A DNA stretch of 64,000 bases. Origin: Fonticula alba ATCC 38817 (Eukaryota; Protista; Nucleariida). Every line of letters starts with the position of its first letter. Position 1 is the stretch's first letter. Position numbers and translations under genes: made by a program. The stretch is from assembly GCA_000388065.2 (NCBI GenBank), contig KB932204.1; one strand, written 5' to 3'. A model generated the notes under the pieces. The model had not been told where the DNA came from and made no database searches. It saw only the letters and a list, made by a program, of their open reading frames with translations. Of the stretch, positions 25,960 through 58,560 are shown in pieces.

Positions 25960-27244
25960 GCCATCGGCCTTCTCGCGGGGGGAAAAGGGGACGGCCGGGG
26001 GGCTGGGCGGCGGAGGGGGGGGGGGGGGGGGGGGGGGCCCCCCCACGCCCCCCAGGGGGCGGAGGCGGGTCGTTTTGGGGTTTTTTTTCTTTTTTTCCCC
26101 GGCCTTTGTCCGGGGGTTTTGGGGGGGGGGGGGGGGGGGGGGGGGAGAAGCGCCTGCCAGAGCCCCCAGGAGCCGATGCAGGATCGTTTCGGTGTTTTTT
26201 TCCTCTTTATCCCGGCCCTTGTCCCGGGGCATTCGGGGGGAGGGGGGGGGGGGGGGGGGGTGGCGCAAAGCTTGATACATCCCTGGAGGATGCCTCGGGC
26301 GTGCGATGTGTGAGACGGGGCTGCACCGGTGCCGCCCGCAGATTCGCCAGCCAGCGCGGGCGGCCCAGCGCCGGCGGAGGGGAGAGCCGGACATTGTCTA
26401 GTTTTCTTCGGGAGGGACAGACGGGGCAGGGCCGTCGATGATGCTGAGCTGGCCCCGCCTCTCTCCCGGGGGTTCGGGGGGGGACGTGGAAAAGTGACCG
26501 ACCTCCTCGGACCCAGGGCATGGGCCCTCGCCGTCAGCACCCCCCTCTCCCTCCCCCTCTTTCCCCCTGCCTTCCCCCTGCCTTCCCTTCTCCGCCTCCT
26601 CGCCCCACCCTCTCATCTCCTCTTGGCCCGTCCCTTCCAGCCGGCCGCNNNNNNNNNNNNNNNNNNNNNNNNNNNNNNNNNNNNNNNNNNNNNNNNNNNN
26701 NNNNNNNNNNNNNNNNNNNNNNNNNNNNNNNNNNNNNNNNNNNNNNNNNNNNNNNNNNNNNNNNNNNNNNNNNNNNNNNNNNNNNNNNNNNNNNNNNNNN
26801 NNNNNNNNNNNNNNNNNNNNNNNNNNNNNNNNNNNNNNNNNNNNNNNNNNNNNNNNNNNNNNNNNNNNNNNNNNNNNNNNNNNNNNNNNNNNNNNNNNNN
26901 NNNNNNNNNNNNNNNNNNNNNNNNNNNNNNNNNNNNNNNNNNNNNNNNNNNNNNNNNNNNNNNNNNNNNNNNNNNNNNNNNNNNNNNNNNNNNNNNNNNN
27001 NNNNNNNNNNNNNNNNNNNNNNNNNNNNNNNNNNNNNNNNNNNNNNNNNNNNNNNNNNNNNNNNNNNNNNNNNNNNNNNNNNNNNNNNNNNNNNNNNNNN
27101 NNNNNNNNNNNNNNNNNNNNNNNNNNNNNNNNNNNNNNNNNNNNNNNNNNNNNNNNNNNNNNNNNNNNNNNNNNNNNNNNNNNNNNNNNNNNNNNNNNNN
27201 NNNNNNNNNNNNNNNNNNNNNNNNCCCCCCCCCTCGCCTCAGCC

Positions 27245-29508
27245 ATGTCCCTCGCCACGATCCCTCAGATCTCGGCCGAATGGACACAGGTATGTCCCTG
27301 CCCTCGCCCCTCCGCCCCCGTGTGATCCCCCTTCCCTCGCGCGCCGTCCCCTCGGCACGCTTTGGCCCCCAGCCTGTCTCACCTCCTGCCGGTGCATGTG
27401 ACACCCCCCGCCACAGGTCCTCCTCGGCGAGGCGGCCTCCGTCCTGTCGGCCCTGCGCACCGCGATGGCCACACACCGGGACTACGGGACTCTGCATGTC
27501 CTGTCCCAGCGTCTGGAAGCCCTGAAGGCCGATGTGGAGCTCCACCGGGATTATGACTTCATGGCGCAGCGGGTGTGTGTTAACCACTGCCGGGTGTGCT
27601 CGCCGGCCGGGGGGCCCCCCTGGCCGGGGCAACCCGGCGGCCTGCCCAGCTGGCCGGTGTGCCTGAATGGCCCGCTGACAACGCTGCTGGAGCCGTTCCT
27701 CTGTTGTCTGGAACGTGGCCAGGCGCCGGCCGGTGTGGCAGTGTCGGTTCTCGGCAGCCTGGAGCGTCTGCTGACGGCCGGGCTCCTGCGCGCCGGGCCG
27801 ACCCCCTTCTTCTGCCTGGCCAGCAGCCAGGCCCCCTTCGCCCTGCTGCACCAGCGCATGCAGCAATCGTCCGCCCTGCTGGCCGTGTGTGGCATCCTCT
27901 CCCGCCATACCCTGGACTCGGAGGATTTCCTGGCCAGCGAGGCGGTCCTCCTGCACATCACCCAGGTCCTGCGCGCGGTGTGCGCCGTGTCGGAGCAAAC
28001 CCTGACCGAGGCATCCGCCGGGCTGGACACCTACCTGCAGCTTCTACATGGGCATTGGGCCTTCGGGGCGGCGCATGTTCCCCTGCCGGCCGATGTGGGT
28101 TGCCTCACGGACGCCGGGCTTTCCCAGGCACTGGTCATTTGCCTGTCCATTGTGACCCACCTGCGTCTGAGTGAATTCGTGCGCCAATCGGCCGAGAGTA
28201 CCTTGCATGCATTGGTCCGGCACATGGGCCGCCGGTTGCGCTTCTTCGTGCTGGTGTCCTCGCGCGTGGGGAACCCCTGCAGCCAGGCCATCCTCAAGGA
28301 CCCCGCCGCGAGTGGGGCCTCCCCTTCGGGCCGGCCGGCCCCCATGGCCGGCTCGTGCGCCTGCCCGGATGACTATCACTTTGATGAGGTGCTCCTGGCC
28401 ACGCAAATGGATCGGGCCTTTCACTTTGGCGGTGCCGGGCCCTCGGGCCCGGTGACCATTGTCCCCTCGGAGCCCACCCTGCCGGTGGCCACGGCCGGGG
28501 CCGATGCCGGCGGCGGGCTGGCCGCCATGCCGGGCTGCGCCGGCGGCACCCCGGCCCCGGAGTCTCGCGCGGCCGTTCGCTCGTCGTACCAAACCCGCGA
28601 TGGGGTCACCCCGCGCGATGGCATCGTTCACACCTCCTCCATGGCCTTCGACTTCTATGAGCGCCCGGTGTCCACCTGGTTTGCGGACCTCTTTGACCGG
28701 CTGCTGGAAGGCGAGGCCGGGGCCCGGGCCATTGCCGAGCGTGTCCGGCCCCAGGCCCGGCCTCCGGGGCTCTTTTGCGGGTCACTGGCCGCCGTGTTTG
28801 TGCTGCTGCGCTATTGCGAGGCCTTCATCAACCCGGCGGAGCTCCACAGCACCGACACCCTGCGCCTGCTGGGGCTGAACATGCTGTGTGCCCTGTTCGA
28901 GGCCGGGGCCGATGCCCTGGGGCAGCTTCGCCTGCTGGCACATGCGCGCCTGCCGCAGGTGATGAAGCACCTGTTTGGCCTGCTCGGGGCCGCCGGGGTC
29001 GGGGGTCTCGGCGGTGCTGGCCCCGGGGGCGGCGGCGTCCTCGGCGTGGCCGGCGGGCTGGGCGGAGCCGGCCCCGGCCCGAGCCCAAGCGGGCCCAAGT
29101 CCGACCGGGCGGCCGTGCTGCTGGCCATGGCATCGCGCTGCTTGCAGCTCCTTTTCCATGCGAATCCCCGCCGGCTGCGGACATATCGCATCTTCTTCCT
29201 GAAGAGTGCGGCCCGGCGCTTCCGCGATCCCGACTGCCCGGGCGATGTGAAGTTGGCCTTCTTGGAGCTTCTGCGCGCCCTGCTGGTGGACATTCCCTTC
29301 CAGGCGGCCTCCGACCCGCGGGATACCATCCTTCGCCCGATGTACCCGGAACAGGCGCTCTTTGTCAATGTCGACTGTGTCCTGGGGCTGGAGAATGTCT
29401 TCACCACCTGTGTGCGTCGGCCGTCGCCGGGCATCTCCCCTTGGCCATGTCCTTCTTTCCTTTGCCTACCCCCCTCCCCCCCCCCCCCCCCTCTCGCTCT
29501 CCTCCCCG

Positions 29509-50028: not shown

Positions 50029-52680
50029 CTAGGAGGTGGGCGCCGCGAACAGCGGGTTGTCGGCGGTCGTGGTGCGCGACGTGAACAGGGGATTGTTGTT
50101 GTCGGTGCCGCCCAGATCGGCCGCCTGCTTGCTGCTTGCCAGGAGGCCATTCTTGGCGGCGTACTTGACGGCGAAGACGGCTCCGGCGGCCACCAGCCCG
50201 GCGGCGGCCACCGCGCCGACGGCGATGCCGACAATGGCCCCGGTGCCGAGGTTCGAGCAGGCGTCCTCCGGGCGGACACACTGATCGCACGAGTCCACCA
50301 CCATCGGCGGGTTCTGCTGGTCGGCCAGGAACCAATTGCCGCCGCAATCCTGCATGCAGATCTCCCGGTTGGCCTCGACATCGGCGGCCGGGATGCACTG
50401 GCCGCAATCGGTCAGGACCATGTCCCCGCCGAAGCGCCCACTGCAATCCGGCAGGCAGGCCTCGCTCTCCTCCCACTTGCCATCCCAATCGGTCGGCACA
50501 CAGAAGCCGCACGAGTCGAGGGTCTCGAGCTTGAAGCACTCGCCCGTTCCACAGGGGCTCAGGTCCTGGTTGCAGACATATGTCCCGGTGGAGGCGGCCA
50601 CCAGGCCGGAGGCGGCAGCGGCCGCCGGCGATTCGTCGCCCAGGCTGTTGCAGCACATGCCGCACTCGTCGAAAAGCTCGTACTGGTCGACACCGGCCAG
50701 GACCACGTCACCCGGGCACCGGCCACAGCGGTCACGCTCGCGCACCGTGCCGTCCTTGGTCACATCGCAGGCATTGGTCTCCGGGCACTGGTGGCAGGCC
50801 TCGAAGGAGGTGTCCGTGTAGAGGTCATGGCACCGAACCAGGAGCCCGGCCTCGTAGGGGTCCTCCTCCGGCGAGGAGAGGCACCCGCACTCGCGGCCCT
50901 CGGCCATCACCAGCTGGGCATTGAACTTCGGGTCATCCGGGCTGGAGTGGCAGATGCCACACCGGTCGGAGTTCCGGTTGAAGTTGCTCAAGTCCGCGGC
51001 CTGGTGGCACTCGCCGCAGAAGTCCACCGCCGCACGGCGGGCATCCGTCACCAGCAAGTACTTGCCACTGCAATCGGCCGTGCAGGACTCCTCCGAGTTG
51101 TAGCCCGGGGTAATGCGACACAGGCCGCAGGGGTCCAGGTCGGCGTTCCACTCGGCCGAGCCGACCAGCCGGCAGACGCCGCAATCGTCGCGCTCGCTCT
51201 TGGGCTTGGTGTTGGACAGGTGATGGGCCCCGGCGCAATCCTGCACACACCACGGCTCCTCCGAGTCGCTGAGCCGGCAGCGGCCGCACTTGTCCACGAA
51301 GGCCGCTCCGCCCCAGGTCCCGGCGCAGTCCTTCTGGCAGGAGTACTCCTGCTTCGGCTGGGCCGGCATGCACTTGCCGCATGGGTCGACCCAGTGCTGG
51401 GCGCCGCTCTCCGGGGTGTTGGGATTGGCGTCGGCCTTCTCGGCGGCAAACCAAATGCCAGCGCAGTCGCGCTTGCAGCGGGCATGACGCTCGGGCGCCG
51501 CCGAGCCGGCCGCTCCACCGGCTGGCCGGGCGTCGAAGCAGAGCCCGCACTCGTCCAGACGATGGCGCGCCCCGGCCGGGGCCAGGTAATGGTCCCCGGC
51601 GCAGTCGACCAGACACTGGCACTTGTCCGACCCCGGGGGACAGGTGTTTCGATCCTCCAGGCTGCACAGCAGCTGGCCGCAGGGGTCCTTCCCGCGGACG
51701 CCATTGCACTTGCCGCATTCATTCTTGTCGGCATTGGTGCCGCCACAGACGCCGCACTCATCGCGCGCCACCACGCTCTTGGGATCCGAGGTGTACACTT
51801 CGCGGCAGGAGTCCCAGACACATGCCGGGGCCGGGGGTGGTCCCTGCCCACCGGGGCCCGGGGCCACACGATGGCAGGTCCCGCAGGCGTCGACCTCATT
51901 CTCGGGCGCGGTCTTGCCTTCCATGAAGTAGGCCCCGGCGCAGTCCTTCTGGCATTTCTCATGCACGCGGGCGGCCCACTTGCCGGGGCTGGGAGCATAG
52001 CCGGGCATGCAGTTGCCGCATGGGTCGGTCAGGTTGGCCGGCTCCTCGGTGTCCTGGCGGTAGTATTGGTTCTTGCAGTCGCGCTGGCAATCGGTGTGGG
52101 TCTGGCCGCCGGCCGTGCAGAAGCCGCATTGGTCGAGGCTGAAGGCCGGCTCCTCGCCCTGCTGGTACTTGTTGCCCTTGCAGTCGGTGCTGTGGGGACG
52201 ACACGGGGGGGGGTCAGTCATTTTTCCGGGAGCGCGTATGCGGGGGGGGNNNNNNNNNNNNNNNNNNNNNNNNNNNNNNNNNNNNNNNNNNNNNNNNNNN
52301 NNNNNNNNNNNNNNNNNNNNNNNNNNNNNNNNNNNNNTGAGAGTATTTCGCAGGGGGGCCGGTGAGCTTCGAGCTGGCAGCGGCCTCCGATGGCCTTATA
52401 ATATGGGAGGGCTGTGCGGCAGGAGTCGAGCATGTCGTCTCGGGTCTCTCTCTCATACACCTACTATGCACATGCGTGCGTGTGCGTGTGTGTCTCGGGA
52501 ATGCGCAAGAGGGGGTCCCTTGAAGGGGCGCCAACCGGAAATACAATAGGCGAGAGGCTGGCGCCCGGGGGTCTATCCCTCCGCGGAGCATTCGCCGGCG
52601 CCGCTGGCGGCGTTGTCTTCGCACATACACATACACATTTGGACACACTTGCACACTGGGACTCAGGAGACACGATAGCG

Positions 52681-52712
<32 letters not shown>

Positions 52713-55700
52713 GCATGGCACAAGGAGCTACGGCGGGACGGGTTGAGGGACCACACAGGGGTACGTACAGGCATTGGCAATTGGATGTGCAGGTGTCCAG
52801 CGTGCAAAGATTCACCCCGCAGCCATTCTTGCCCATCTTGTACTTCGGGGAGTTGGGGCAGTTGCCACACGGGTCCTTCTGGTAGGTGACCCCCGGGCAC
52901 ATGCGGCAGGCATCGAGATTCTGGTTGAGGTCGGTCACATCGCGGCCGGTGGCCGGGTCGATGCGCTGCTTGACGCAGATGCCGCACACGTCCTGCACAT
53001 AGAAGTCCTCGCCCTCGCGGACCCACTCCTTGCGGCAGTCCTGCTCGCAACGGGCCGGGTTCTTGCGCGAGGTGCACTTGCCGCACTGATCGACGAAGTT
53101 CTCCGACTGGGCCTTGGCACTGTCGTACCACTTGCCGGCGCAGTCCTTGACGCAGGTGTTGGAGCTGGAACGCGGCAGGCACTGGCCGCACTCATTCAGC
53201 ACATTGGCCGGCGTGTCGCCACGACGGTAGCGGGCCCCCTTGCAGTCGGTCAGGCAATTGTCCGGCGGGCTGCTGGCCGGGTGGCACTGGCCGCAGGCGT
53301 CACGGACATTGGCCGGCGAGGTGCCGGTGTACCACTGGCCGGCGCAATCCTGGGCACAGGTGCACTGGTCGGGGCTCTTCTGGCAGAAGGCCGCCTGCTC
53401 CAGGCGACAAAGGGGCACACCGCAGGGGTTGAGCCCGCGCGGGCCATTGCACTCGCCACAGGCGTTCTTCTGCTTGTTCTCGCCCCAGCAGATGCCGCAA
53501 TCGTCCTTGTTCTTGTTGGGGTTGGTGCCGGCCGGCAGGCACTGGCCGCAGTCATCCACAAAGTGCATGGCGGCCTGGCTGGTGCGCCAGGCCCCGGAGC
53601 AGTCCTTCTTGCAGAAGGCCCCCCCATCGACGGTGGTGCATTGGCCGCATTGGTTCTTGCGGGGGGGTTGGACAAAGTGCTCGGACCCGGCAAGGCACTT
53701 GACCGCCAGGCCGGCCTTCCAGCCGGTGGCCAGGTAGTGCGCACGGAAGCCGGCCTTGTCCGAGTCGGAGGTCAGACCGGCGGTGGGGTTGGCCGCGCGA
53801 TAGGCGGCCACATCCGGCTGGCAGGCCTTCAGCGAGATGTTCCACTCGTGCTTCGTGCGGAAGGCCTCGCAGGCGAAGGGCTCCAGGTTGTCCGCGCGGG
53901 CCTTGGTGGCCAGCGCACGGGCATCCTCGCGGAACTTGCTGTCGGCCACCAGGGAGCTGATCGGATCAAACCACGCCGGGCAGATGTCATTCTGCATGTT
54001 GACATTCTTCGGCAGCCCCGAGCGGAAGAAGTTGCCGGAGCAATCCTTTTCGCACCAGCTGCTGGTGGCACCGTCGAGGGTGCAAACGCCGCACTGGTCG
54101 AAGCGGAAGGGGCCGTTGCATGTGCCATTGCAGTCGACCTTGGCCGGGCCGCCGCACACACCCTTGCAATCGAAGACCTGGGGGGGGAGTGGCGGGTTGT
54201 TGGTGGAGCGGGGGCGAGGATTTTCAGCAAGTCCAGTGAGAAGGCCGGCCACGCGAGGAAAGGGCCCCGGAGGCGAGCCGCGGGCCACGGAGGTAACCGT
54301 GGAATGTGCAACATGTCAGTCATCGGGGGAGGGGGTTCTTTCCACTTGGGTATGGGGACTCCCGGCCTGGTGGGGGTCCAGGGAACGGTGCGGGGCGCGG
54401 GTGCCGGGCAAATGGAGCGATGGGGGGGAGAGCGAGACAAACAACAGCCAGGGCCAAGAAAAAAGGCATGGCACCATGGCACGGCCGTCGGTGGCCCCGC
54501 TTGAGGACATGCCACCCGGGCGGCGGGCGCCCCAATTCGGCACCGTACCTTGCCACTATGGCGGACCCCATCGCAGCCGCAGACATCCTTCGGCGGGAGG
54601 CAGGCGTCCTTGGTGCAGGTATACTCCATGCACCGGTCGTCGCACTTGGTCACCACGTCGGTCACCTGGATGAACATGTTCTTGACGAAGTTGTGCGCGT
54701 AGACATCCTGGACGACCTTCTCGATCTGGAACAGACGAATGGTACTGCCGGCATCCAGCATTTGGCCCTGGATGGAATTCCGGGCCAGGGGATCGGCACG
54801 CACGCGCTTGTGCGTGGCGTGCGGGTCGTACCCGGAGAGGTCGCCATTTTCGACATTGAGGTTGGCCTCGCCGAATTGGGCGCTCGTCAGGCAGGTGTTC
54901 TCGTCGTCGAACTTGGAGGGGACGGCCATGAAGACGGTCACCCCGCGGCGGATGAGGATGTCGGCCGTCAGGTCGACCTCCTGCTGGAACTTCTCGAAGT
55001 TGGCCGGGGTCATGGCATTCCGGCCGAGGTTGACGTTGGACTCCGGGGGGCAGAAGAAGCGCCCGGTCGGCTGGCCGGACACCAGGTTGTCCAGCGACAC
55101 CGGCGGATCGCTGTCCTCATCGGTGAAGAGCATCAGCACCGGGTGGGCATCGGCGCGCCAGATGGTGTTGACATTGTGGTCCCGACGGTTGGCCTGGAAG
55201 ACACCGCGAATGGTCTCGAGGGTGCCTTCGTGGCCGCCGTATGTGGAAATCATCGAAATGACCTGCTCAAACTCCTCCAGGGTGTAGTCGTTCAGCGGCT
55301 GGAGGGGGGAATGAGGGGGGGAGGGGGGCACCGGGTGGGGGGTGCGGGACCGGGGGAAGGGCAACCAGTCAGGAACACAGTCATCGGAACGGGGCTCGCG
55401 GCTGCTTGTGCTCGGTGATCGTTGCGATCCGAGAGGATGGCGGCAGGGCGGGACGGGCTTGCCCAACGGATCTGACCCCTTGGTTGGGGGGGTCATCTCG
55501 CCGGAACCGGCCCCCGGACAGGATCAAGGCCAAGTGTGTCGGGGTCAAGTGGAGTGGCTACGCACGGTGAACTTCTTGTCCATGACCGGACCGCGGCCGG
55601 AATAGGTGACGATGGCCACATGGGCGTCGACGTCCGTCTCGGTGAGGAGATTCAGCCAGGTTCGGAGGACTGTGGGGACGGTTAGCGGTGGATGCGACAT

Positions 55701-56156
55701 GCGGCGGGAACCCCATCCGCCCATCAGCTCCCTCTCGGGACATCGATCAGTCGCCTGGGAGAGGCATGCCCCGGGGTCNNNNNNNNNNNNNNNNNNNNNN
55801 NNNNNNNNNNNNNNNNNNNNNNNNNNNNGGGGGGAGGGGGGCGGGGCTTCGAGACCCGGGAAAAGCGCACCATTCTTCACTGCCAGGATGGAGGGGTCCA
55901 TGGACACCGAGACATCGAGCAGGATCAAATAATCGACCTTGGTCCGAGGCGTGACCCCGGCGCACTCGGGGGCATAGCACCGAGGCGGGCCACAGAGGCC
56001 GCCCTTGGGCTGGGCAAGGGCGAGGGCTCGGACACTGGTGGTTCCAATGCTGCAAACCACCAGCAGGGCCAGCAGGCCGAGGGAGACAATGGTTCGCCAG
56101 CCGAAAGGCACCCGGGAGGGGGCAGGGGTGCCGCCGGTGTGGAGTAAGTCCGACAT
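50029..56156 (-). CDS. Type I membrane adhesion-receptor candidate: signal peptide, integrin beta-I-like vWA (MIDAS), Cys-rich repeat stalk, Gly/Ala TM helix, double NPxF tail (integrin-beta/Sib-like)
   Basis: Exons 56156-55871, 55669-55566, 55298-54549, 54177-52769 and 52189-50029 sum to 4710 nt (1569 aa plus stop), with GT..AG ends and matching phases. Hydrophobic N-terminus IVSLGLLALLVVCSIG; YLILLDVSVSM; GGHEGTLE; WRADAHPVLMLFTDEDSD; about 25 [DN]-x-C-G-x-C motifs; TM AIVGIAVGAVAAAGLVAAGAVFAV; tail NNNPLFTSRTTTADNPLFAAPTS*. Confidence 0.85.
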
Positions 56157-58560
56157 GCTGGGCACGCCTTCAGGACCGCACGCCGGGACAGAGGCACGGG
56201 CCAAGGGGGCAGGGTTCCCTCTGTGTGGGGGGGGATGGTGCACGCCGGTCAGTTGTGGGGTATGCATCGAGTCCAAGCAAGACCTCCGTGCCAGATGGTG
56301 GGAACCAAAACACGACAAGAGCGCCATGGGGAGGAGTTGTGGGTGTGGAACGTACACGGCAACTTAAAAGGCGAGACACCGAATGGCTTGATAGACGGGC
56401 AGGCGACTTCGGGGCAGAAGGAGCCCAAACGGCCGTCCGATTGTAGGACGGGCACTGGCGTGGGATGAAAGATGCAAGCAGGGGCAAAGGGTGAGGAGGC
56501 GCGGGGCGCAAGTTGGGGGATTGGGCACAGATGAAGAAGAGAGGGGAGCCAGGAACACCGCTTTGAATGCACATCGCCATTTCCCGGCGCTCAGGTGGAT
56601 TATATAGGTGCATTCGGGGGCAGGCGGGGGCAAGAGGAACACCTGGACGGGCGAGGTCGCGAGGGTGCGTGCATGTCCTGGGACGCCATGCTCGCCACGT
56701 CGCGCCCCCACCTCCTTGACCTCGCCTGGCTCTGCTGCTGGGGTCCTGGGCCGCAGGGCATGCGGTGTGATGGTCGAGAGCGGGCAGGGGTAGGAGGTGG
56801 GGAAAGGGCCGGCGCCTTGGGCGCCACGGGCCGGAGAGGGCCGTCTCGGAAGCGTAACACGTCAGAAGATCGCGGCGGTGTTGCCGGCCGCCGGAGTGGG
56901 GATCGGGCCAGCCTGCCTATTTCCCGCCCTCTTGGCCCCTCCCTCGCCGAACTACGTCTCGGCCTGCTCGGAGGGCGCCAGGCGGCCTGGATGCCCGGGG
57001 GCCCAGTGCCTCCTCCTTTGCAATCTCTCGGACTTGGCTCCTCGGTTGCGGGAGGCATTTCCAGCATGTTGCCAGACTCGGCACATTTCCGGGGATTCTC
57101 CCCTTTCAGCAACCACCACCCATAAGCGGGTTGGAAATCCGCCAGACCGGTTGAATGCTCAGGGAACACATCTTAGCCCCGCACCTCGGCACTGGGCCGA
57201 CCAGGAAACGAGGCCGAAAGTTGGTGGACATGCAGGATACGCATGGGCTCGATAGGCCGCCCGCCTGCAGGGCCCCAGATCCTGCCCCCATGTTCGGGCG
57301 GCTGTCCCCCCCCCCCCGCCTCCCGCGTCCACGAATGGAGGTGAGCATTGAGCCTTGGCTCCTTTCGAGCGGGATGCTCCCCGAGTCGGCGGTCGCGTGC
57401 CAGGCAAGAGGGAATCCCTCGAGGCGCCCTGGGCCGGGTCGCCGAGCAAATTGAGAGCCACACCCAGGGGGGACGGCAGGAATGCGAAACCCTCTCCCGG
57501 AGTGGGGGCGAGGGGCTCGAGCCGCTGGGAGATTGCCAGGTAACCTCTTTCACTGGGACATCCCCCCTGTGGAAATCGATCCCAGGAGACAGAGCCGAAA
57601 GAGGGAAAGGGCTCCATATGTAGGGGATGGGTCGTGGCCGCGCGGCGTGCCGTACTGCAGCTCGGGCCACACATTGCTCGCTTGCGGTGTTCGGCAATGG
57701 GCTCCCCACTCGCGCGAGCACAGCCACCTTGGGGGCATGTCCTGGCTTTCGACCACGCCAGCACGGCGTCGCGGCCGTGGGCAGGGGCTTCCTCCTGAGG
57801 GTGCCACGGGAGTGCCAGCTTCAAAACCAGGCCATTGCCACGGGGCCACAATGCGCTCGTCATCCGATCGCAACAGGAAATTAAGCGCCCAGGCTCCATA
57901 CCCGGGGGATCCTTCCCCTCGCCATGCCTCGCCCTGGCATCTCGCCCGGGCCCTTGGGGCTGGTGTGTCAGAATGAGGGCGGCAAGGGGGGCTGTTTTTC
58001 TTGCTTACTCGGCAATGGGTCGTCTCCCCAACGACAATCCTCGCACAGGCCCCGGTGAATATAAACATGCCCTCGGGACACAGCAGCAGGCTCCCGGCAG
58101 GGACTGCTCATGGTAGGCCCTCGCCGCTCCCGGCCTCCGTCCAAGGCGACACCCTTCATCGATGGGGACCGAGGTCGGGGGCGCCATTTCCCGCGCCGGA
58201 TGGCTGGCACCCGCCAAGTGGGCGCCGCTCGACAATGGGCCCGATGCCGAGAACCCAGCAAGCCAACACTATGTCCGCAGGGAGGGGGGCGGGGGGTGGG
58301 CCAGGGGCGGGCTAGTGTCATGCTGGAGAGGGGCCCGGGGGGAGCCCCGGTGTGTGGAGCCCACCCCACCAAGGCACGACCATGCGCCGGGCTCGGGGGC
58401 CTCGCATCTGGAAATGTATAACTGTCGAGGAGCGTGCGCGCCTCGGCCCCGAAGGAGATCCAGAAAGAGGCCATAGAGAACTGCATCTGTCCCCGGGACC
58501 GACGAAACTGGACAACCCTCCACTGCCAAGGGGTACGAGCGAGAGGGAGAGGGAGGGAGC

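What the first reader, a model, noticed from the sequence alone, without database searches (positions are those of the whole stretch)
55060..55935. vWA domain with beta-I-type rather than alpha-I-type MIDAS features
Seen: VDYLILLDVSVSMD (DxSxS at 55902-55916), then YGGHEGTLE and IWRADAHPVLMLFTDEDSD. Established: integrin beta-3 has DLSYSMKDD, DAPEGGFD (MIDAS Glu rather than Thr) and IGWRNDASHLLVFTTD. The WRxDA…L(V/M)(F/L)xTD match and the Glu are beta-I-like. The ADMIDAS DD pair appears only partly kept (SMDPS). Inference: metal-dependent ligand binding with altered allosteric regulation.
Basis: partly seen in the sequence, partly recalled or inferred. Interest (0 to 1): 0.7.

Follow-up and report, generated by a model that had tools for sequence, protein, structure and literature searches.

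The report
Glu-type MIDAS vWA head, Fonticula receptor
The stretch encodes, in three exons, the metal-binding head of a Fonticula alba surface receptor; it shares one integrin-beta hallmark (a glutamate at the metal site) but belongs to a separate vWA subfamily that is commonest on bacterial surface proteins, so it is integrin-like in design, not an integrin beta-I domain.

Summary
Observation confirmed. The motifs lie where stated, on the minus strand, in a spliced gene, H696_03181 of Fonticula alba (1569 aa, annotated 'hypothetical'). The N gap lies inside intron 1. The public model, an intron-free paralog and 12 homologs all run gap-free across the exon 1/2 junction, so no residues are missing.

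Interpretation partly supported. Glu154 (GGHE) is conserved in 97 of 100 homologs. It sits in the alpha2-alpha3 loop, where MIDAS Thr or Glu sits. In a profile alignment it pairs with the MIDAS Glu of integrin beta-8.

The other beta-I features fail:
- Pfam Integrin_beta matches 1 of 100 members, against 98 for VWA.
- There is no ADMIDAS pair, no SyMBS ligands, no SDL and no hybrid domain.
- 'RxDA...TD' is generic vWA.

The domain belongs to a 'GGxE...TDEDSD' vWA clade. Members are bacterial PEP-CTERM surface proteins, chytrid fungi, unnamed environmental eukaryotes and two Fonticula genes.

The likely function is metal-dependent adhesion by a single-chain receptor coupled to talin; this is inferred, not shown.

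This scan had already noted the same gene in this window (tail, stalk, whole receptor). No model coordinates were available, so the Glu-to-metal distance is untested.

The parts
55871..56156 (-). Exon 1 (residues 1-95 plus one base). Holds the start codon, a signal-peptide-like hydrophobic stretch, the CGPPRCYAPEC motif, strand beta1 and the MIDAS DVSVS.
   Evidence: Translation. Identical to the N-terminus of P0005. GT donor at 55870-55869.
55902..55916 (-). MIDAS D-x-S-x-S (D81, S83, S85).
   Evidence: D81 is kept in 98/100 and S85 in 98/100 homologs; S83 is S or T.
55670..55870 (-). Intron 1 (GT...AG), which holds the assembly gap 55779-55828.
   Evidence: no residues are missing at the junction.
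55566..55669 (-). Exon 2 (residues 96-130): second half of helix alpha1, then strands beta2 and beta3.
55299..55565 (-). Intron 2 (GT...AG).
54549..55298 (-). Exon 3 (residues 131-380): alpha2, the Glu loop, alpha3, beta4 with TDEDSD, a long insert, alpha5 to alpha7, and the Cys-rich connector KCDDRC...CGCDG.
55227..55229 (-). Glu154 codon (GGHE), at the position of the MIDAS Thr (alpha-I) or Glu (beta-I).
   Evidence: 97/100 conserved. In the alpha2-alpha3 loop of the model. Aligned to the Glu of TPEGGFDAM in integrin beta-8.
55107..55124 (-). T189-D190-E191-D192-S193-D194: the MIDAS Asp followed by an invariant acidic cluster, the clade's signature.
50029..54548 (-). Rest of the gene, given as context: Cys-rich DxCGxC stalk, Gly-rich transmembrane helix and a tail with two NPLF motifs. 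These exons were not mapped individually here.
   Evidence: P0005 sequence. Translation of the last exon's end.

Best explanation
The stretch encodes the extracellular head of a type I membrane receptor, Fonticula alba H696_03181. The head is a roughly 330-residue vWA domain with an intact MIDAS (D81, S83, S85, E154, D190). It belongs to a distinct vWA clade defined by DxSGSM ... GGxE-x-G-L-E-A-I-R ... TDEDSD and by a long C-terminal elaboration. That clade is abundant in bacterial surface proteins (PEP-CTERM-sorted proteins and large multidomain adhesin-like proteins). In eukaryotes it is fused to a Cys-rich stalk, a transmembrane helix and an NPxF/Y tail. The head most likely binds Mg2+ or Mn2+ at the top of the beta-sheet and captures an acidic group of a ligand as the sixth coordination partner. 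Glu154 supplies a carboxylate where alpha-I domains use Thr, as in integrin beta-I. The invariant E191, D192 and D194 next to the MIDAS Asp may form an adjacent second cation site. The receptor appears to work without an integrin alpha subunit, and links to talin through its tail. Shown: the gene structure, the fold, the conservation and the family placement. Inferred: metal binding, the ligand, the second site and any allostery.
Against: No coordinates of the model were available, so contact between Glu154 and a metal is inferred only from topology and alignment. No RNA evidence was obtained. The ligand is unknown. Some family members replace the MIDAS Asp (TNEDSD, TAEDSD), so not every member need bind metal in the canonical way. 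Foldseek does rank integrin beta chains first, and one member (P0003) nearly reaches the Integrin_beta cut-off, so a specific kinship with beta-I is not excluded. FG-GAP-type repeats exist in the genome, so a propeller partner is not excluded either.
Confidence: 0.68

Rival explanations
1. It is a true but very divergent integrin beta subunit. On this reading the head is an orthologue of the beta-I domain that has lost the PSI and hybrid domains, the SDL, the ADMIDAS and the SyMBS, in a lineage said to lack integrins.
For: Glu at the MIDAS position, and the E-x-G-[LF]-[ED]-A-[IM] helix start aligned with integrin beta-8. The 19 best Foldseek hits are integrin beta chains. P0003 scores 23.2 bits on Integrin_beta against a cut-off of 24.8. 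Weak Integrin_b_cyt hits on the tails. The stalk motif DxCGxCGG resembles the amoebozoan ITGB stalk motif described in bioRxiv 10.1101/2020.04.29.069435.
Confidence: 0.17
2. It is a Sib-type receptor, that is, a homologue of Dictyostelium SibA-E and not a family of its own.
For: The overall design is the same: vWA head, Gly-rich transmembrane helix and two NPxY/F motifs that bind talin in Dictyostelium (PMC9453864).
Against: Pfam vWA_SIBA-E (PF24909) matches neither P0005 nor any of 100 relatives nor the genome. The model itself works, since it gives a weak hit on a bacterial protein. Sib proteins are reported to lack the cation motifs and a C-terminal cysteine-rich region (Kang et al. preprint, 10.1101/2020.04.29.069435), whereas this head keeps the MIDAS and has a long Cys-rich stalk.
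Confidence: 0.08
3. The head is not an adhesin. On this reading the MIDAS serves a structural or enzymatic-partner role, or the gene is a barely expressed relic of a bacterial gene transfer.
For: No reads were laid in four RNA runs carrying the species label. The closest relatives are bacterial.
Against: The reads result is no test, because the organism was not shown to be in those runs. The gene has spliceosomal introns, an intact 1569-codon frame, a paralog, and conserved relatives in chytrids and environmental eukaryotes with the same tail. The MIDAS and its flanking residues are under strong conservation.
Confidence: 0.07

Closest known systems
Integrin beta I (beta-A) domain, Pfam PF00362
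   Same: vWA fold. DxSxS followed by Glu (not Thr) followed by Asp at the MIDAS. The helix start E-x-G-[LF]-[DE]-A-[IM]. A long loop after beta4. The context of a Cys-rich stalk, a transmembrane helix and a tail with two NPxY/F motifs.
   Different: Below the Pfam cut-off. No ADMIDAS Asp pair (D87-P88-S89 here). No SyMBS ligands (T149-Y150-G151-G152 before H153-E154). No specificity-determining loop (beta2-beta3 is a 4-residue turn). Not inserted in a hybrid domain; about 20 residues precede it. No PSI domain and no detected alpha subunit. It has the invariant TDEDSD cluster instead.
Bacterial vWA + PEP-CTERM surface proteins (about 325 aa, unnamed; Gammaproteobacteria, Planctomycetes, Nitrospira, Vicinamibacterales)
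   Same: They cover the same domain over about 80% of its length (E down to 3e-65), with the same DxSxSM, N-x-N-P-E-A-G-L-E-A-I-R, TDEDSD, QYG and SLQAQ motifs.
   Different: They have no CGPxxCY or CGCDG flanks, no stalk, no transmembrane helix plus NPxY tail. They are sorted by exosortase. Their Glu is preceded by NxNP, which recalls the integrin SyMBS; in Fonticula it is preceded by GGH.
Dictyostelium SibA-E ('similar to integrin beta'), Pfam PF24909
   Same: A single-chain receptor with a vWA head, a Gly-rich transmembrane helix and a talin-binding tail with two NPxY motifs, in an organism without integrins.
   Different: No match to the Sib vWA model. A Cys-rich stalk in place of bacterial-type R repeats. 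The MIDAS is retained.
Integrin alpha-I and generic vWA domains (PF00092: vWF A1/A3, collagen VI, anthrax toxin receptor 2, PitA)
   Different: Those use Thr at the fourth MIDAS position and TDG after beta4. They are about 190 residues long, against about 330 here.
Amoebozoan/Rigifila 'type I ITGB' (Kang et al., bioRxiv 10.1101/2020.04.29.069435)
   Same: Stalk motif of the DxCGxCGG type, an NPxY/F tail, and a variable ADMIDAS.
   Different: Those are reported with PSI domains and a conserved SyMBS, and were found as Integrin_beta homologues. No sequence of theirs was available here for a direct comparison.

Membership tests
Integrin beta-I domain (PF00362) | Scores above the Pfam Integrin_beta gathering cut-off (24.8 bits). 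| tested here: not met
   P0005 has no hit at E <= 1. 1 of 100 relatives has a hit at E <= 0.01 (P0003; 23.2 bits for the whole protein). No hit in the genome.
Integrin beta-I domain (PF00362) | MIDAS made of DxSxS, Glu (beta3 E220) and Asp (beta3 D251). | tested here: met
   D81, S83, S85, E154 and D190 are present and conserved. E154 aligns with the Glu of TPEGGFDAM in beta-8. Its topological position in the alpha2-alpha3 loop fits. The distance to a metal was not measurable.
Integrin beta-I domain (PF00362) | ADMIDAS Asp pair three and four residues after the last MIDAS Ser (beta3 D126, D127; numbering from established knowledge). | tested here: not met
   The window has P88 and S89 there. 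Eukaryotic relatives vary. Bacteria have Gly and Glu.
Integrin beta-I domain (PF00362) | SyMBS ligands before the Glu (beta3 N215, D217, P219) and after beta2 (D158). | tested here: not met
   The window has T149-Y150-G151-G152-H153. Only the bacterial relatives have N-x-N-P before the Glu.
Integrin beta-I domain (PF00362) | Specificity-determining loop, and insertion of the domain into a hybrid domain preceded by a PSI domain. | tested here: not met
   In the AF2 topology beta2 (109-118) and beta3 (123-131) are joined by a short turn. Only about 20 residues (CGPPRCYAPEC...) precede beta1, and a Cys-rich connector follows alpha7 directly.
Integrin beta-I domain (PF00362) | Closer in structure to beta-I than to other vWA domains. 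| tested here: inconclusive
   Foldseek: beta8 and beta3 come first (E 7e-9, TMq 0.44-0.47) against alpha-M I (1.9e-7, TMq 0.39). VIA: PitA 17.5, integrin beta1/beta3 17.4, Rpn10 17.3, ITIH 17.1-17.3, vWF A1 16.9. These are tied.
Integrin beta-I domain (PF00362) | Works as a heterodimer with an alpha-subunit beta-propeller. | tested here: inconclusive
   No Integrin_A_Ig_1 match in the genome. FG-GAP-type repeats do occur. No binding test was run.
vWA domain (PF00092) | Scores above the Pfam VWA cut-off (23.8 bits) and has the alpha/beta Rossmann-like vWA fold. | tested here: met
Sib family vWA (PF24909) | Matches the vWA_SIBA-E model. | tested here: not met
   No hit for P0005, for 100 relatives or in the genome.
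Sib family vWA (PF24909) | Receptor design of vWA head, transmembrane helix and two NPxY/F motifs that bind talin. | tested here: met
   The tail ...NNPLFTSRTTTADNPLF... follows a Gly-rich transmembrane helix. Talin is present in the genome. Binding itself was not tested.
'GGxE/TDEDSD' vWA clade (unnamed; bacterial PEP-CTERM proteins and eukaryotic receptors) | DxSxSM, G-x-E-x-G-L-E-A-I-R, [TS]DEDSD, QYG and a C-terminal elaboration of about 140 residues. | tested here: met
   Alignments A2 and A3. Column counts. E down to 3e-65 for the profile.

The most novel reading that the evidence does not exclude
The head marks an undescribed family of alpha-independent, integrin-beta-like adhesion receptors in Holomycota (Fonticula and chytrids) and other protists. 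On this reading its Glu-type MIDAS vWA domain, shared with bacterial exosortase-sorted surface proteins, is the sister or precursor form of the integrin beta-I domain. The integrin beta 'design' (Glu-MIDAS head, Cys-rich stalk, talin-binding tail) would then predate and outlast canonical integrins in the fungal lineage.
Probability: 0.25. Interest if true: 0.75.

Novelty: new variant of a known kind. Interest (0 to 1): 0.5.

Why it matters
Fonticula alba is the cellular slime mould on the fungal side of the opisthokonts. Its genome is said to lack obvious integrins and Dictyostelium-like adhesion molecules (PMC9097593), and Holomycota are said to be devoid of integrins (bioRxiv 10.1101/2020.04.29.069435). 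Yet this gene, a paralog and chytrid relatives (one of which, Synchytrium P0215, also carries the TM helix and NPxF/Y tail) encode a metal-site vWA head joined to a talin-type tail. That gives a concrete candidate for cell-substrate or cell-cell adhesion in these organisms. It also gives a testable link between bacterial surface vWA proteins and integrin-like receptors. For the narrow claim, the result is a caution: a Glu at the MIDAS is not diagnostic of a beta-I domain.

Tried and rejected
RNA evidence for the splice junctions: four RNA runs with the species label laid 0 reads on 54100-56400.

Single-exon searches gave nothing: Pfam on each exon, PDB phmmer on exon 3 and on the paralog, and a word search with the window ORF for candidates of 305-971 aa.

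The joined sequence I used is the database protein P0005, returned.

The ESM Atlas feature search and the shape search gave only generic vWA leads (scores 0.83-0.87; TM 0.52-0.56).

The wide family profile (A3) against the PDB found no integrin beta at E <= 0.01.

An IQ-TREE 'quick' run did not finish. FastTree was used in its place; it gives SH-like support only and warns of long branches.

The origin of the environmental relatives could not be named; they sit on Logan contigs of SRR28397937 and ERR11260139.

No paper cites the gene's accessions. Nothing was found on chytrid vWA/talin receptors. PMC8812817 is not held.

Complex prediction was not used, because no protein-protein binding is claimed.

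Rejected readings: contamination by bacterial DNA (the gene has introns and a eukaryotic stalk and tail), and a hidden exon in the gap (the homolog alignment is gap-free across the junction).
Full report
WHAT IS THERE.
The finding lies on the minus strand of a GC-rich (about 65%) eukaryotic window. DVSVS is at 55916-55902. YGGHEGTLE has its Glu codon at 55229-55227. IWRADAHPVLMLFTDEDSD has TDEDSD at 55124-55107.

They are not in one open frame. The gene is spliced:
- exon 1: 56156-55871
- intron 1: 55870-55670 (GT...AG)
- exon 2: 55669-55566
- intron 2: 55565-55299
- exon 3: 55298-54549

The big protein search returned the public product of this gene, P0005. This is H696_03181 / XP_009495340.1 / A0A058Z933 of Fonticula alba, 1569 aa, named only 'hypothetical' or 'VWFA domain-containing'. 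Its sequence has exactly these junctions.

THE ASSEMBLY GAP.
The 50 N at 55779-55828 lie inside intron 1, 41 nt from the donor and 108 nt from the acceptor. Three independent lines show that nothing coding is lost:
- A paralog elsewhere in the genome (G000:C8; L002:1153-2229, 359 aa) has no intron through the whole domain and is colinear with exons 1, 2 and 3.
- In the family alignment A2 the stretch from DVSVSMD to IVTYSG aligns with 12 homologs without a single gap.
- AlphaFold models one uninterrupted helix alpha1 (residues 84-104) across the junction at residues 95/96.
RNA reads could not be brought to bear, because four runs under the species label laid no read at all.

WHAT KIND OF DOMAIN.
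Single exons match nothing in Pfam or the PDB. The whole domain does match. Pfam VWA (PF00092) scores 25.7 bits on P0005 and 28.9 bits on residues 50-380, against a cut-off of 23.8. It scores 30.7 bits on the paralog.

With a 100-sequence alignment (A3), AlphaFold2 gives a confident model (pLDDT 87.7, pTM 0.86). The order of elements is the canonical vWA order:
- beta1 72-81, then the DxSxS loop
- alpha1 84-104
- beta2 109-118 and beta3 123-131
- alpha2 134-146
- the loop with Glu154
- alpha3 156-163
- beta4 182-188, ending in T189-D190
- a long, partly disordered insert, 195-227
- alpha5 228-247 and beta5 251-256
- further helices, then beta6 317-321 and alpha7 328-347
- a Cys-rich connector, C349 to C372

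About 20 residues with three Cys (CGPPRCYAPEC) precede beta1.

IS IT BETA-I-LIKE?
Points in favour:
- Glu154 occupies the loop before alpha3, the topological place of the fourth MIDAS ligand. By established knowledge that ligand is Thr in alpha-I domains and Glu220 in integrin beta3.
- Glu154 is conserved in 97 of 100 homologs, as strongly as the DxSxS motif.
Searched against all PDB sequences, it finds only integrin beta-8 chains below E 0.1 (best E 0.0075, 19.4 bits). The family Glu aligns with the Glu of TPEGGFDAM, and fRsdarkvliLvTDEDSD aligns with WRKEAKRLLLVMTDQTSH.
- Foldseek puts 19 integrin beta chains first (E 7e-9 to 2e-7, TMq 0.44-0.47), ahead of the alpha-M I domain (1.9e-7, TMq 0.39).

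Points against:
- With the eukaryotic profile A2, alpha-2 I (E 4e-7) beats beta-8 (1.4e-5). With the wide profile A3, no integrin beta appears at E <= 0.01.
- Pfam Integrin_beta matches 1 of 100 members (P0003, just under the cut-off), while VWA matches 98. vWA_SIBA-E matches none.
- The beta3 ADMIDAS positions are P88 and S89 here and vary in relatives. The SyMBS positions are T-Y-G-G.
- There is no specificity-determining loop and no hybrid or PSI domain.
- The 'WRxDA...TD' match is the generic vWA beta4 motif. Integrin alpha-L matches those profile positions too. W177 is Phe or Tyr in most homologs, and only R178 and A181 are conserved.

WHAT IT REALLY BELONGS TO.
The exhaustive search with the paralog found nine full-domain relatives, P0001-P0009 (E 4e-29 to 4e-15). 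One of them, P0005, is the window's own product. All but the 497-aa P0001 (no transmembrane helix or tail) show the same design:
- signal peptide
- CGPxxCY
- this vWA head
- C..C.Y.C...CLPP..ICGCDG
- a DxCGxC-rich stalk
- CGNG..GEECD
- a Gly-rich transmembrane helix
- a tail KNGL...NPLY...NPLY

A word search with their profile found 149 further proteins, down to E 3e-65, covering about 80% of the domain. Most are bacterial proteins of about 325 aa that consist of this vWA domain plus a PEP-CTERM sorting signal (Gammaproteobacteria, Planctomycetes, Nitrospira, Vicinamibacterales). There are also proteins of chytrid fungi (Chytriomyces, Synchytrium, Podochytrium, Irineochytrium). The Synchytrium protein P0215 also has a transmembrane helix and an NPLF...NPLY tail.

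Of the remaining 107 hits of the exhaustive search, 56 carry the same GG-x-E-x-G...A plus [TS]DEDSD signature. These are large bacterial surface proteins with metallophosphatase, cohesin/dockerin, M23 or TIG domains.

The invariant features of the clade are DxSxSM, E154 with G-L-E-A-I-R after it, R178, and T-D-E-D-S-D. In a FastTree the ten stalk-type eukaryotic heads, the four chytrid heads and P0015 (a row I had grouped with the bacteria; its origin is uncertain) fall on one side of a branch with SH-like support 97, against the bacterial proteins. This tree has long branches and no bootstrap.

The Glu-type MIDAS is thus a property of a broad, mostly prokaryotic vWA clade, not a mark of integrin beta. 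The bacterial members have N-x-N-P before the Glu, which recalls the integrin N-x-D-x-P-E. That is a lead towards a deeper kinship, and it is not tested here.

HOW IT PROBABLY WORKS (INFERRED).
D81, S83, S85, E154 and D190 would hold Mg2+ or Mn2+ on the top face, and a ligand carboxylate would complete the coordination shell. Glu instead of Thr adds a negative charge to the first shell. In integrins that Glu is shared with a neighbouring Ca2+ site. Here the invariant E191, D192 and D194 directly after the MIDAS Asp are the obvious candidates for such a neighbour.

The N- and C-termini leave the domain together through Cys-rich segments into a long stalk. The stalk ends in a Gly-rich transmembrane helix and a tail with two NPLF motifs separated by TTT. 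The genome encodes talin (Talin_middle plus I/LWEQ in one 2415-codon open frame).

By the same six-frame method the genome has no Integrin_beta, Integrin_A_Ig_1 or Sib-vWA match. FG-GAP-type repeats do exist, so a propeller partner is not excluded.

LITERATURE.
- Toret et al. state that the F. alba genome lacks obvious cadherins, integrins and Dictyostelium-like adhesion molecules (PMC9097593).
- Kang et al. state that Holomycota are devoid of integrins, describe an amoebozoan ITGB stalk motif DXCGXCGGX(3-6)CXGC, and report that Sib proteins lack the three cation motifs (bioRxiv 10.1101/2020.04.29.069435).
- SibA's design and talin binding are summarised in PMC9453864.
- No held paper cites this gene's accessions.

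EARLIER NOTES OF THIS SCAN.
Earlier notes on the same window had already flagged the tail, the stalk and the whole receptor. I re-read the tail and confirmed the organism myself.

VERDICT.
It is a new variant of a known kind. The interest is moderate. It rests mainly on the undescribed receptor family in a lineage thought to lack integrin-like adhesion receptors, and on the bacterial kinship of its head.

Noticed in passing
L002:1153-2229 (G000:C8:1691319-1692395, + strand): A second Fonticula gene of the same family. Its head domain (359 aa, DFSGS ... GGYE ... TDEDSD) is encoded without introns and is 30% identical to the window's exon 3. A GTATGT donor follows ...VRHGPH.
   Followed up: partly
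P0215 (Synchytrium endobioticum SeMB42_g04880); also P0212, P0225, P0232 (other chytrids): Chytrid fungi have the same vWA head. The Synchytrium protein continues into a Ser/Ala/Pro-rich stalk, a transmembrane helix and a tail with NPLF and NPLY. An integrin-beta/Sib-like receptor therefore exists inside Fungi. The other chytrid models end in odd His/Tyr/Asn-rich tails that look like mispredicted 3' ends.
   Followed up: partly
P0118, P0121, P0129, P0196, P0200 and about 80 others: Bacterial proteins of about 325 aa made of this vWA domain plus a PEP-CTERM (some VPDSG- or IPTL-CTERM) sorting signal. They carry N-x-N-P-E-A-G-L-E-A-I-R, which resembles the integrin SyMBS/MIDAS stretch N-x-D-x-P-E-G-G-F-D-A-I more than the eukaryotic members do.
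   Followed up: partly
G000:C5:913728-920340 (+): Talin gene of Fonticula: Talin_middle (E 9e-37) and I/LWEQ (E 7e-29) in one 2415-codon open frame. A second I/LWEQ gene lies at C1:2305623-2306493.
   Followed up: no
L005:3157-5646 (G000:C4:3031656-3034145, - strand), about 165 kb beyond the window: An 830-codon open frame with FG-GAP_3 (E 2.6e-10) and FG-GAP (E 5e-8) repeats. 20 FG-GAP-type matches occur genome-wide. I did not examine whether any is an integrin-alpha-like propeller with a transmembrane helix.
   Followed up: partly
P0001, P0008, P0025 (TNEDSD) and P0006 (TAEDSD, DSSRS): Four environmental family members replace the MIDAS Asp after beta4 with Asn or Ala, yet keep Glu and EDSD. 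This hints that the EDSD cluster, not the canonical Asp, is the constrained element.
   Followed up: no
window 54100-56400: Four large RNA-seq runs listed under the same species label (X8, X9, X10, X13) gave not one read on this gene. Either the label is loose or the gene is silent in those samples.
   Followed up: no
window 26001-28000: GC fraction drops to 0.50 in a window that is otherwise 0.60-0.76 GC. This may be another assembly gap or an AT-rich insert.
   Followed up: no
L003 (Logan SRR28397937 contig, 15.3 kb): The family member P0006 sits intron-free in a very gene-dense contig, next to alpha-amylase and a GT5 glycogen/starch synthase. The organism is not identifiable here.
   Followed up: no
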